Assembly: GCF_006345805.1 (NCBI RefSeq)
Contig: NW_021826117.1
Span: 1-13,531 of the forward strand
Length of the DNA: 13,531 nt
Source: Octopus sinensis
Taxonomy: Eukaryota
Direction: 5' to 3'
A program made the translations under genes and the position numbers. Below the pieces are notes generated by a model that did no database searches, was not told the origin of the DNA, and saw only the letters and a list, made by a program, of their open reading frames with translations. This document shows positions 10,129 to 10,547 of the stretch, in pieces; positions within the stretch are counted from its first letter, which is position 1; each line of letters starts with the position of its first letter.

Positions 10129-10547
10129 ACTTACATACTTGTACTTGTGGCGACATTCACCCTGGGCGAGTTGAGTCAGCTTCTTCTACTCATGGAAGAA
10201 GTTTCGTGGGAATATGTGGATTTCACAAGCGGTCCCCAACAATACCGCATGTGGAAACATCCTGCTTGCCGCAGATTGTCCGCAGACGCAGGGACAGAAC
10301 GACCGAGGAGCCACCGGTTGCCGAAACAGACACTCCGAGGATTTTCACCAGATCCCCGTCTGCCGGGTTGTGCCCCTAATACCACTCAGTGTCAGACCAA
10401 TCCGCCTTGGGTGGCCCTACCGGGAACCGAAGTTCCCGACGGCATAGCTCTGAGACTACCCGTTGCCAGCTTCCCCACCACGGTGAGGAGGGATAGACTT
10501 TGGGGAAGCTTTGGACTTTGGGGACGCGGATGGCCTTTGGGGACGAA
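10129..10547 (-). mobile_element. Non-autonomous, ribozyme-headed retroelement (probably derived from an RTE-clade LINE by internal deletion)
   Basis: GC-rich island. The 3' end on the minus strand is CACAAGTACAAGTATGTAAGT, a short tandem tail. Flanks AAACCAAACACAT (10116-10128) and AAAACAAGCACAT (10548-10560) match 11/13. It has an HDV-like fold at its 5' end, no tRNA head and no recognisable ORF. Confidence 0.65.
10352..10509 (-). ncRNA. HDV-like (double-pseudoknot) self-cleaving ribozyme candidate
   Basis: Hand fold on the minus strand: P1 GCTTCCCC (10509-10502) / GGGGAAGC (10476-10469); P2 ATCCC (10494-10490) / GGGAT (10356-10352); P3 TCC/GGT with one T-T mismatch; L3 TCACCGT; P1.1 CA/TG; GCAAC junction; P4 base CGGG/CCCG enclosing a structured insert; J4/2 G-C-A-G-A with putative catalytic C at 10362. 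Confidence 0.72.

What the first reader, a model, noticed from the sequence alone, without database searches (positions are those of the whole stretch)
10352..10509. Complete HDV-like self-cleaving ribozyme fold on the minus strand
Seen: all elements of the nested double pseudoknot occur in the correct order. P1 is GCTTCCCC/GGGGAAGC starting with G; P2 is ATCCC/GGGAT; P3 closes a 7-nt L3 (TCACCGT); P1.1 is CA/TG, a non-canonical swap for the usual CC/GG. The HDV-genomic-like GCAAC junction is followed by a CGGG/CCCG P4 base and J4/2 G-C-A-G-A (C-N-R-A, putative catalytic C at 10362). P4 carries a ~90-nt structured insert with a perfect CGGGAAC-TTCG-GTTCCCG hairpin (10421-10438) and a TAGTCTCAGA/TCTGACACTG stem. 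Established: HDV-like ribozymes occur in the 5' UTRs of R2, RTE and L1Tc retrotransposons. Inference: this is an RTE-type ribozyme; it resembles the 5' end of fish Rex3/Expander RTEs as I recall them. One T-T mismatch in P3 may mean this copy is weakened.
Basis: partly seen in the sequence, partly recalled or inferred. Interest (0 to 1): 0.85.

Follow-up and report, generated by a model that had tools for sequence, protein, structure and literature searches.

The report
Probable HDV-like self-cleaving ribozyme, unvalidated
The minus strand at 10509-10352 can fold into every helix of a hepatitis-delta-type self-cutting RNA, more completely than chance easily explains, but no related copies could be found, so its activity and its claimed RTE-retrotransposon origin stay untested.

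Summary
The best Rfam match for the region is an HDV-like family (RF02682), but at 19.6 bits against a cut-off of 44. The fold misses the published HDV-like descriptor in three ways. P1.1 has an A-U pair where Y-R is expected. P3 has two Watson-Crick pairs plus U.U. P2 is 5 bp with a 6-nt J4/2.

A descriptor loosened to admit these deviations hits only this site in the window. In shuffled sequence it hits about 1 per Mb, or 0.04 per Mb when the P4 basal stem and an all-Watson-Crick P1 are required (about 1e-3 per window). P4 holds the window's only G+C-containing perfect 7-bp hairpin, with a cUUCGg loop on the minus strand.

The last 39 nt of the fold plus 41 nt downstream are 100% identical to a segment inside two tRNA-like SINE copies. 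Spacing and junction microhomology indicate the SINE copied it from this locus or its family.

No ORF follows the ribozyme, and no homologous copy was found in any collection, so covariation and RTE/Rex3 membership are untested. Verdict: probably a genuine HDV-like ribozyme (about 0.6), and a new member of a known kind.

The parts
10502..10509 (-). P1 5' strand GCUUCCCC; predicted cleavage 5' of G10509
   Evidence: 8 Watson-Crick pairs with 10469-10476; duplex energy -14.6 kcal/mol
10495..10501 (-). J1/2, AAAGUCU (7 nt)
10490..10494 (-). P2 5' strand AUCCC
   Evidence: Pairs with GGGAU at 10352-10356. U10489.G10357 could extend it to 6 bp at the cost of a P3 pair (-7.1 kcal/mol)
10477..10489 (-). 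P3 (UCC/GGU: two C-G pairs plus U.U) closing L3 UCACCGU (10480-10486)
   Evidence: L3 fits U..HCG.Y but has A where the published descriptor wants Y. Rfam RF02682 aligns this block with high posterior probability
10469..10476 (-). P1 3' strand GGGGAAGC
10463..10468 (-). P1.1 3' strand U10468 G10467 (pairs with A10484 and C10485 of L3), then G-C-A-A
   Evidence: The UGGCAAC block matches the RF02682 consensus AGGCAAC; A-U here against U-A there
10364..10462 (-). P4 domain, 99 nt: basal CGGG/CCCG, stem UAGUCUCAGA/UCUGACACUG (9 of 10 pairs), hairpin CGGGAAC-UUCG-GUUCCCG at 10421-10438
   Evidence: The inner stems appear in the unconstrained MFE fold. The hairpin is the only G+C-containing perfect 7-bp/4-nt-loop hairpin in the window. 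The cUUCGg form is expected at about 2e-7 per nt in shuffles
10357..10363 (-). J4/2 G-C-A-G-A-C-G; putative catalytic C at 10362 (C-N-R-A)
   Evidence: It is 1-2 nt longer than the published CNRA* element. Elongated J4/2 variants are active in theta ribozymes (PMC10879173)
10352..10356 (-). P2 3' strand GGGAU
   Evidence: It can alternatively pair with the downstream AUCCUC run (about 10336-10341; -7.0 kcal/mol)
10311..10390 (-). 80-nt segment (RNA 120-199) shared at 100% identity with two SINE copies. It supplies part of the P4 3' strands, J4/2 and the P2 3' strand, plus 41 nt downstream
   Evidence: Shuffled versions complete the fold in 6.7% of trials, or 2.0% with the P4 base. Other real 80-mers from the window do so in 1.3% and 0.8%
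7545..7624 (+). Copy of the 80-nt segment inside a tRNA-like SINE head; lacks P1, P2 5', P3 and L3
9229..9308 (+). Second copy, made by the 1685-bp tandem duplication
10510..10546 (-). Two degenerate ~18-nt repeats of the P1-J1/2-P2 5' block directly upstream of the cleavage site (UCGUCCCCAAAGGCCAUCC and GCGUCCCCAAAGUCCAAA)
   Evidence: TRF array 10491-10543, period 18, 2.8 copies, 74% matches; sequence. Meaning unknown

Best explanation
The minus-strand RNA from G10509 to U10352 is a genuine member of the HDV-like (delta-type) self-cleaving ribozyme class, with a large structured P4 domain.

Proposed mechanism, taken from the established mechanism of the class and not shown here: the RNA folds co-transcriptionally into the nested double pseudoknot P1/P1.1/P4 and P2/P3. 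C10362 in J4/2 acts with a bound Mg2+ ion. The chain is cut 5' of G10509, leaving a 5'-OH on the downstream RNA.

The most likely biological role, also inferred, is to free the 5' end of a non-LTR retroelement, or a non-coding derivative of one, from a read-through transcript.

A 71-nt piece of its 3' part was copied into a neighbouring tRNA-like SINE by a microhomology-guided template switch. That SINE copy lacks P1, P3 and L3, so it cannot cut itself.

This particular copy may be weakened by its U.U in P3, short P2 and long J4/2.
For: 1. All helices and junctions are present in the right order and register.
2. Among 4227 Rfam families, the best match is HDV-F-prausnitzii (RF02682). It covers P1, P3, L3, P1.1 and GCAAC at 19.6 bits, E = 0.098-0.27 for all families together. 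For that family alone this works out to about 2e-3 per window.
3. The P1.1 deviation is compensatory: A in L3 pairs with U after P1, where the validated F. prausnitzii family has U with A.
4. The relaxed descriptor hits only this site in the window. The chance rate is 0.036 per Mb with the P4 base and an all-Watson-Crick P1.
5. Among 104 unrelated real sequences that share the same 18-nt L3/P3/UGGCAAC core, four have a P1 in register and none completes the fold.
6. P4 holds a 7-bp hairpin with a cUUCGg loop. It reads as UUCG only on the minus strand and is unique in the window.
7. The nested part of the fold scores -55.5 kcal/mol. Adding P2 (-7.1) makes it competitive with the unconstrained MFE of -61.0.
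8. The 80-nt shared segment completes the fold far more often than shuffled or other real 80-mers do. It has no notable fold of its own (z = +0.48).
9. The SINE head spacing is 97 nt, which equals the canonical 26 nt plus 71 nt. The junctions carry 9-nt (ACTGAGTGG) and 4-nt (GTGG) microhomologies. This makes the ribozyme locus or its family the donor, not the recipient.
10. SINE bodies built from LINE 5' UTR pieces that avoid the extreme 5' end have been described, and a 5' ribozyme was proposed as the reason (PMC5786205).
11. Each deviation has an active natural precedent: a P3 mismatch in the jewel-wasp R2 ribozyme (PMC3774820) and an elongated J4/2 in theta ribozymes (PMC10879173).
Against: - The match is below the Rfam gathering score (19.6 against 44) and no Rfam family reaches gathering in the window.
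- It fails the published RNArobo HDV-like descriptor at L3 position 3, at s4, in P3 (U.U), and in P2 length or J4/2 length.
- MFE z-scores are unremarkable.
- No second copy of the 5' half exists in the window, and none was found anywhere, so there is no covariation or conservation evidence at all.
- No ORF, poly(A) tail, microsatellite tail or clear target-site duplication defines a retroelement.
- My descriptor was relaxed after the fact, and the relaxed motif alone occurs 1-3 times per Mb by chance. That means thousands of chance matches per gigabase-sized genome.
- GGGGAU can pair equally well with a downstream AUCCUC.
Confidence: 0.6

Rival explanations
1. Chance resemblance. A G+C-richer stretch of transposon-derived DNA happens to satisfy a loosened HDV-like pattern, and no ribozyme ever existed here.
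For: - The relaxed motif occurs at 1.1 per Mb in shuffles and about 3 per Mb in real metagenomic DNA.
- Control motifs with A, G or U at the catalytic position are as frequent as C, so the catalytic C adds little specificity.
- The Rfam score is less than half the gathering score.
- There are several simultaneous departures from the published descriptor.
- No fold-energy signal and no homologues.
Against: - The joint probability is low. The core match is about 2e-3 per window for the RF02682 family. Multiplied by the roughly 2% chance that the 3' segment completes P2, J4/2 and the P4 base, this gives roughly 4e-5.
- The unique cUUCGg 7-bp hairpin sits inside P4, on the right strand.
- The P1.1 change is compensatory.
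- It is the only hit in the window even with a much looser pattern.
Confidence: 0.25
2. A genuine HDV-like ribozyme that is not retroelement-borne: a single-copy host element like the intronic CPEB3 ribozyme, sitting in an intron or a non-coding transcript. The SINE would have acquired 71 nt of it through a purely local DNA-repair or replication template switch.
For: - The donor and the SINE copy lie only 1 kb apart, in inverted orientation, and are 100% identical.
- They sit next to a recent 1685-bp tandem duplication, which fits one local complex rearrangement.
- No ORF, tail or second copy of the 5' half is present in the window.
Against: - Most large HDV-like ribozymes known in animals are at retroelement 5' ends (PMC3774820, PMC5786205).
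- The locus is a G+C island in A+T-rich, repeat-dense DNA.
- Copy number cannot be assessed without the source genome.
Confidence: 0.1
3. A structured RNA or DNA element with another function, for instance a 5' UTR or promoter structure of a repeat, in which the P4-like hairpins are real but the HDV-like core is incidental.
For: The strongest single structural signal, the cUUCGg hairpin with its enclosing stems, lies in P4, which is not part of the catalytic core. Conserved, unexplained domains exist in RTE 5' UTRs (PMC5786205).
Against: This does not explain the exact adjacency of an 8-bp P1 to P3/L3, the UG-GCAAC block, or C-A-G-A followed by the P2 complement.
Confidence: 0.05

Closest known systems
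[quoted passage not shown] 2011, Sanchez-Luque et al. 2011; PMC3774820, PMC3185411)
   Same: The same nested double-pseudoknot order. P1 directly abuts P3/L3. L3 has U at position 1, and C and G at positions 5-6. J4/2 reads C-N-R-A. P4 is variable and sometimes large. P1 starts with G at the expected 5' end.
   Different: No LINE ORF follows it. The 5'-terminal position in a repeat family is not shown. P1.1 has A-U where Y-R is expected. P3 has a U.U. P2 is only 5 bp and J4/2 is 6 nt.
Rfam RF02682, HDV-like ribozyme of Faecalibacterium prausnitzii (drz-Fpra)
   Same: It is the best covariance-model match. P1, the CCUC..CGUGG block of P3/L3, and the xGGCAAC block align. Both have one non-G-C pair in P1.1.
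   Different: 19.6 bits against a gathering score of 44. The bacterial ribozyme is 74 nt with a short P4, whereas here P4 is 99 nt. The model's 3' part (P4, J4/2) was not aligned to the proposed J4/2. The host is different (animal-like genome), so convergence on the same core is likelier than common descent.
Large HDV-like ribozymes activated by peripheral domains (Webb et al. 2016, PMC4908430)
   Same: A long, stably structured peripheral domain is attached to the core.
   Different: In that study the activating domain bridges P1 and P2 through J1/2. Here J1/2 is 7 nt and the large domain is in P4.
SINE middle bodies derived from LINE 5' UTRs, including the cephalopod Ceph-domain (Kojima 2018, PMC5786205)
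   Same: A tRNA-like SINE carries, in sense orientation, an internal piece of what looks like a ribozyme-bearing 5' region. It omits the extreme 5' end, which is the pattern that paper attributes to 5' ribozymes.
   Different: Here the piece sits inside the tRNA-like head, between the A and B boxes, not downstream of it. Only one independent chimeric copy is seen, later duplicated. A local DNA-level templated insertion is an equally good explanation. No sequence comparison with the Ceph-domain was possible.

Membership tests
HDV-like self-cleaving ribozymes | Nested double pseudoknot in the order P1-J1/2-P2-P3-L3-P3'-P1'-P1.1-P4-J4/2-P2' | tested here: met
   All strands are present in order and register.
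HDV-like self-cleaving ribozymes | L3 consensus UYYHCG(N)Y, with the two nucleotides after P1 (R, N) forming P1.1 | tested here: inconclusive
   L3 is UCACCGU. Position 3 is A, not Y, and the nucleotide after P1 is U, not R. The two still form an A-U pair, so pairing is kept but the published pattern is not met.
HDV-like self-cleaving ribozymes | P3 of three Watson-Crick pairs | tested here: not met
   UCC/GGU gives two C-G pairs plus U.U. Alternatives are U21.G34 with a bulged U33, or U21.G153 extending P2. An active R2 ribozyme with a P3 mismatch exists (PMC3774820).
HDV-like self-cleaving ribozymes | Catalytic C opening a C-N-R-A J4/2 directly before the P2 3' strand; P2 of at least 5-6 bp | tested here: inconclusive
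   C-A-G-A is present (C10362). Two extra nucleotides precede a 5-bp P2, or one extra nucleotide precedes a 6-bp P2 with G.U at the expense of P3.
HDV-like self-cleaving ribozymes | Reaches the curated score of an Rfam HDV-type covariance model | tested here: not met
   The best match is RF02682 at 19.6 bits against 44. No other HDV-type family appears at E up to 10.
HDV-like self-cleaving ribozymes | Compensatory base changes in the helices among related copies | not testable with these tools
   No related copy was found in the window, metagenome contigs, genome or viral contigs, protein collections or paper supplements.
HDV-like self-cleaving ribozymes | Mg2+-dependent site-specific self-cleavage abolished by C-to-U at the catalytic position | not testable with these tools
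   This is a bench experiment.
RTE-clade LINE 5' end (reader: Rex3/Expander-like) | Ribozyme followed by the RTE ORF (AP endonuclease plus reverse transcriptase) on the same strand | tested here: not met
   No open frame of 70 aa or more on the minus strand from 10350 down to 9650, and no Pfam hit. The locus could still be a truncated or non-autonomous derivative.
RTE-clade LINE 5' end (reader: Rex3/Expander-like) | Sequence similarity to a known RTE, Rex3 or Expander 5' UTR | not testable with these tools
   No repeat library was available. The LINE loci reachable from the window's RT fragment (L105-L113) show no similarity and no HDV-like motif.
RTE-clade LINE 5' end (reader: Rex3/Expander-like) | Cleavage site coincides with the 5' boundary of a repeated element | tested here: inconclusive
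   G+C content rises at about 10546, some 37 nt upstream of G10509. That interval is two degenerate repeats of the first 18 nt. There is no second copy to define a boundary.

The most novel reading that the evidence does not exclude
An active HDV-like ribozyme with a reversed-polarity A-U pair in P1.1 and a 99-nt P4 domain that defines a previously undescribed retroelement family in a cephalopod-like genome. The SINE chimera that keeps only the non-catalytic 3' part would then be direct evidence that intact 5' ribozymes are excluded from Pol III-driven SINEs. The degenerate upstream repeats of P1-J1/2-P2 would record how such elements rebuild their 5' ends.
Probability: 0.2. Interest if true: 0.55.

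Novelty: new member of a known kind. Interest (0 to 1): 0.4.

Why it matters
If it cleaves, it adds a cephalopod-type genome to the hosts of retroelement-associated HDV-like ribozymes. The held literature has no paper that links the two. It would also give a natural example of three tolerated core deviations occurring together.

The more instructive part is the neighbouring SINE chimera. It carries 71 nt copied from the ribozyme's 3' part with clear junction microhomologies and without the catalytic 5' half. That is a concrete case for the published idea that 5' ribozymes shape which LINE pieces can enter SINEs. None of this changes what is known about the ribozyme class.

Tried and rejected
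Searches for related copies, all empty:
- Translated ORFs across the region against the protein collections: no hit and no exact entry.
- Metagenome scan with CCTCACCGTGG-N8-10-TGGCAAC: 104 loci, all chance matches in prokaryotic coding DNA. These were reused as a negative control.
- Bacterial/archaeal genome and viral contig scans, with the 80-nt segment and with a SINE motif: nothing.
- Full-text and supplement searches for sequence fragments: nothing.

The LINE route. The RT-like fragment at 12888-13079 led, through a representative search and a profile search, to a widespread EN+RT LINE family. Nine loci were fetched. They show no Rfam hit, no HDV-like motif and no similarity to the candidate. 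This says nothing either way, because that family is not linked to the ribozyme.

Ideas rejected:
- The 80-nt segment is a SINE piece that landed next to unrelated DNA. The spacing arithmetic 97 = 26 + 71 and the junction microhomology argue against it, as does the completion test.
- It is a tRNA or another known RNA: ARAGORN found none and Rfam found nothing at gathering.
- It is coding sequence on the plus strand: the 156-aa open frame has no Pfam hit and no homologue.
- It is an integrated delta-like agent: no antigen-like or any other ORF is present.

Comparisons with the hepatitis delta agent itself were made only through Rfam models and published descriptors. No viral sequence was fetched or used.

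Full report
**The observation**

I read the minus strand from 10650 to 10250 and numbered the RNA from G10509 = 1.
- P1 is 1-8 GCUUCCCC with 34-41 GGGGAAGC, eight Watson-Crick pairs.
- J1/2 is 7 nt.
- P2 is 16-20 AUCCC with 154-158 GGGAU.
- P3 is 21-23 UCC with 31-33 GGU, two C-G pairs and a U.U. It closes a 7-nt L3, UCACCGU.
- P1.1 is C25-G43 and A26-U42, followed by GCAA.
- The P4 base is 48-51 CGGG with 143-146 CCCG.
- J4/2 is G-C-A-G-A-C-G, with the candidate catalytic C148 at window 10362.
- P4 is 99 nt. It contains UAGUCUCAGA/UCUGACACUG (9 of 10 pairs) and the perfect hairpin CGGGAAC-UUCG-GUUCCCG at 10438-10421.

**How it compares with the published definition**

The RNArobo descriptors for HDV-like ribozymes (supplement of PMC4870747) require L3 = UYYHCG(N)Y, then R-N after P1, three Watson-Crick pairs in P3, at least six pairs in P2, and J4/2 = CNRA plus at most one nucleotide. 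The candidate departs from this in three places.
- L3 position 3 is A and the nucleotide after P1 is U. These two still pair with each other, so the change is compensatory. The validated F. prausnitzii family has U with A at the same pair.
- P3 has a U.U.
- P2 is 5 bp behind a 6-nt J4/2. Alternatively it is 6 bp with a G.U behind a 5-nt J4/2, which leaves P3 with two pairs.

Each departure has an active natural precedent: a P3 mismatch in the jewel-wasp R2 ribozyme (PMC3774820) and an elongated J4/2 in a tested theta ribozyme (PMC10879173). All three together have not been tested anywhere that I know of.

**Independent model-based check**

No Rfam family reaches its gathering score anywhere in the window. 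With permissive thresholds, the best of 4227 families at this site is an HDV-like family, RF02682. It covers 10509-10443 on the minus strand at 19.6 bits against a cut-off of 44, with E = 0.27 for 501 nt and 0.098 for 181 nt. The model aligns P1, the P3/L3 block and UGGCAAC with high posterior probability. It does not reach the proposed J4/2, because of the long P4. For that single family the score corresponds to roughly 2e-3 expected matches in the whole window.

**Chance estimates**

I wrote a descriptor just loose enough to admit the candidate:
- P1 of at least 7 bp with G.U allowed
- P2 of 5 bp
- P3 with at most one mismatch
- L3 = U..HCG(N)Y with P1.1 pairing
- P4 up to 150 nt
- CNRA plus 0-2 nt

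It hits only the candidate on both strands of the window. A much looser version also hits only the candidate, and only with C at the catalytic position.

In 55 Mb of dinucleotide shuffles of 6000-10600, the descriptor hits 1.1 per Mb. Adding a P4 basal stem gives 0.34 per Mb. Requiring an all-Watson-Crick P1 instead gives 0.07 per Mb. Requiring both gives 0.036 per Mb, about 1e-3 per window. Control motifs with A, G or U in place of the catalytic C occur at the same rates, so the C itself adds little specificity. This is the same control used in PMC10879173.

In 1.35 Mb of real metagenomic DNA the loose descriptor hits about 3 per Mb. Because I loosened the pattern after seeing the candidate, these figures flatter it. 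On pattern alone, a gigabase-sized genome would hold hundreds to thousands of chance matches.

The metagenome scan gave a useful empirical control. It returned 104 unrelated sites that share the exact 18-nt L3/P3/UGGCAAC core. Four of them have a P1 in register and none completes the fold.

**Other structural signals**

- The hairpin CGGGAAC-UUCG-GUUCCCG is the only G+C-containing perfect 7-bp/4-nt-loop hairpin in the window. The cUUCGg form is expected about 2e-7 per nucleotide in shuffles. It reads UUCG only on the minus strand.
- The inner P4 stems and P1 appear in the unconstrained minimum-energy fold, although the energy z-scores are not significant.
- With the P2, P1.1 and J4/2 nucleotides held single-stranded, the nested part of the fold scores -55.5 kcal/mol. 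P2 adds about -7.1. Together this is competitive with the unconstrained optimum of -61.0.
- GGGGAU can pair about as well with a downstream AUCCUC run (-7.0 kcal/mol). That pairing is a possible attenuator.

**The shared 80-nt segment**

The stretch 10390-10311 (RNA 120-199) contains part of the P4 3' strands, J4/2, the P2 3' strand and 41 nt beyond. It is 100% identical to plus-strand 7545-7624 and 9229-9308, and identity stops sharply at both ends. Those two copies belong to a 1685-bp tandem duplication (6388-8073 and 8074-9760), so they count as one independent event.

They sit inside the tRNA-like head of a SINE, between ...AGTGGTTAGGG and GGTTTCGATTCC.... They lack P1, the P2 5' strand, P3 and L3. 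This raised the possibility that the 3' third of the fold is a foreign SINE piece, which would make the fold an accident. Three results argue the other way.
- **Completion test.** With the 5' part fixed, shuffled versions of the segment complete the relaxed fold in 6.7% of trials, or 2.0% with the P4 base. Other real 80-mers from the window do so in 1.3% and 0.8%.
- **No structure of its own.** The segment alone has no notable fold (z = +0.48).
- **Spacing and junctions.** The spacing between TTAGGG and GGTTTCGATTCC is 25 nt in a canonical SINE head in the window (about 6106-6180). It is 26 nt in an Octopus vulgaris transcript that shares the same T-arm (comp3271_c0_seq1, supplement of PMC9115989). 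It is 97 nt in the segment-bearing copy, and 97 = 26 + 71. This fits a SINE that natively read ...AGTTGAACTAGTG-ACTGAGTGG-TTGT... and received a 71-nt insert, UAUUAGG...CCGGUGG. The junctions carry 9-nt (ACTGAGTGG) and 4-nt (GTGG) microhomologies.

I therefore infer that the ribozyme locus, or its family, was the donor and the SINE the recipient. The copy is in sense orientation relative to the SINE.

Two mechanisms fit equally well. One is an RNA-level template switch of the kind proposed for SINE bodies built from LINE 5' UTRs. There, the extreme 5' end is thought to be excluded because a complete ribozyme would cut off the Pol III head (PMC5786205). The other is a local DNA-level templated insertion, since the donor lies only 1 kb away in inverted orientation, next to a recent tandem duplication. 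The second mechanism would say nothing about copy number or transposon membership.

**What it belongs to**

The window is A+T-rich, full of (TA)n and other microsatellites, and dense in tRNA-like SINEs. I recognised the SINEs as octopus-like from memory. The only test is the 19-nt identity to an O. vulgaris transcript, so a cephalopod origin is a lead, not a finding.

Downstream of the ribozyme on the minus strand there is no open frame of 70 aa or more, no Pfam domain, no tail and no convincing target-site duplication. G+C content rises at about 10546, some 37 nt upstream of G10509. That interval consists of two degenerate repeats of the first ~18 nt of the ribozyme. I cannot explain these repeats.

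[quoted passage not shown] Both clades are among those reported to have 5' HDV-like ribozymes (PMC5786205). That makes a retroelement origin plausible, but it does not single out RTE, let alone Rex3/Expander.

**Search for relatives**

Everything available came back empty. The RT-like fragment at 12888-13079 (plus strand) belongs to a widespread EN+RT LINE family. Nine loci of that family show no HDV-like motif and no similarity to the candidate. That family is not linked to the ribozyme, so the result is uninformative. Covariation, the decisive computational test, could not be run.

**Verdict**

The joint evidence makes a genuine HDV-like ribozyme the best explanation, at about 0.6. That evidence is the core match to an HDV-type model, the compensatory P1.1 pair, a 3' segment that completes the fold and was the donor rather than the recipient, the minus-strand cUUCGg hairpin in P4, and competitive energetics.

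Chance resemblance remains a serious rival at about 0.25, because the motif is information-poor, the candidate needs three relaxations, and there is no comparative or experimental support. The RTE/Rex3 attribution is unsupported.

As a kind of thing it is known: a new member of the HDV-like class, probably retroelement-associated. Its one instructive side feature is the half-ribozyme captured inside a SINE head.

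Noticed in passing
window 6388-8073 and 8074-9760: A 1685-bp tandem duplication, about 99-100% identical and packed with SINE copies in both orientations. Its right end lies 550 nt from the ribozyme's 3' side.
   Followed up: partly
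window 7500-7700 and 9186-9390 (+): A tRNA-like SINE head carries a 71-nt insert between its A-box-like and B-box-like motifs (spacing 97 nt instead of 25-26). The junctions have 9-nt and 4-nt microhomologies. ARAGORN calls no tRNA in the window.
   Followed up: yes
window 10510-10546 (-): Two degenerate ~18-nt repeats of the ribozyme's first 18 nt (the P1-J1/2-P2 5' block) lie directly upstream of the predicted cleavage site. The nearer one (GCGUCCCC, 10527-10520) could form 7 of 8 pairs with the P1 3' strand. Unexplained.
   Followed up: partly
window 10333-10357 (-): GGGGAU, which contains the P2 3' strand, can instead pair with a downstream AUCCUC run at about the same energy (-7.0 against -7.1 kcal/mol). 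This is a possible competing fold once downstream RNA has been made.
   Followed up: partly
window 12888-13079 (+): A reverse-transcriptase fragment (...MLFANDAALVTHTEEA...SLKKTN). It has no Pfam hit but is 50-68% identical to a widespread EN+RT LINE family of about 1045 aa found in amphioxus, oyster, snail, shrimp and fish records. It is truncated by a (TA)n array.
   Followed up: partly
window 1308-2738: A 477-bp unit repeated three times in tandem at about 90% identity.
   Followed up: no
window 10886-11477 and 4440-5180: A (CAT)n array of about 590 nt, and a strongly G-skewed stretch of imperfect GTG-rich repeats. These create long spurious open frames on both strands.
   Followed up: no
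window about 6106-6480 (+): A different tRNA-like SINE copy with a canonical head (25-nt spacing). It served as the internal reference for the spacing argument.
   Followed up: partly
L105 2157-2915, L106 1-759, L113 2067-2528: The fetched LINE family has a 5' UTR of at least 460-760 nt that is conserved between members (69-77% identity). Neither my descriptors nor Rfam detect an HDV-like motif in it.
   Followed up: partly
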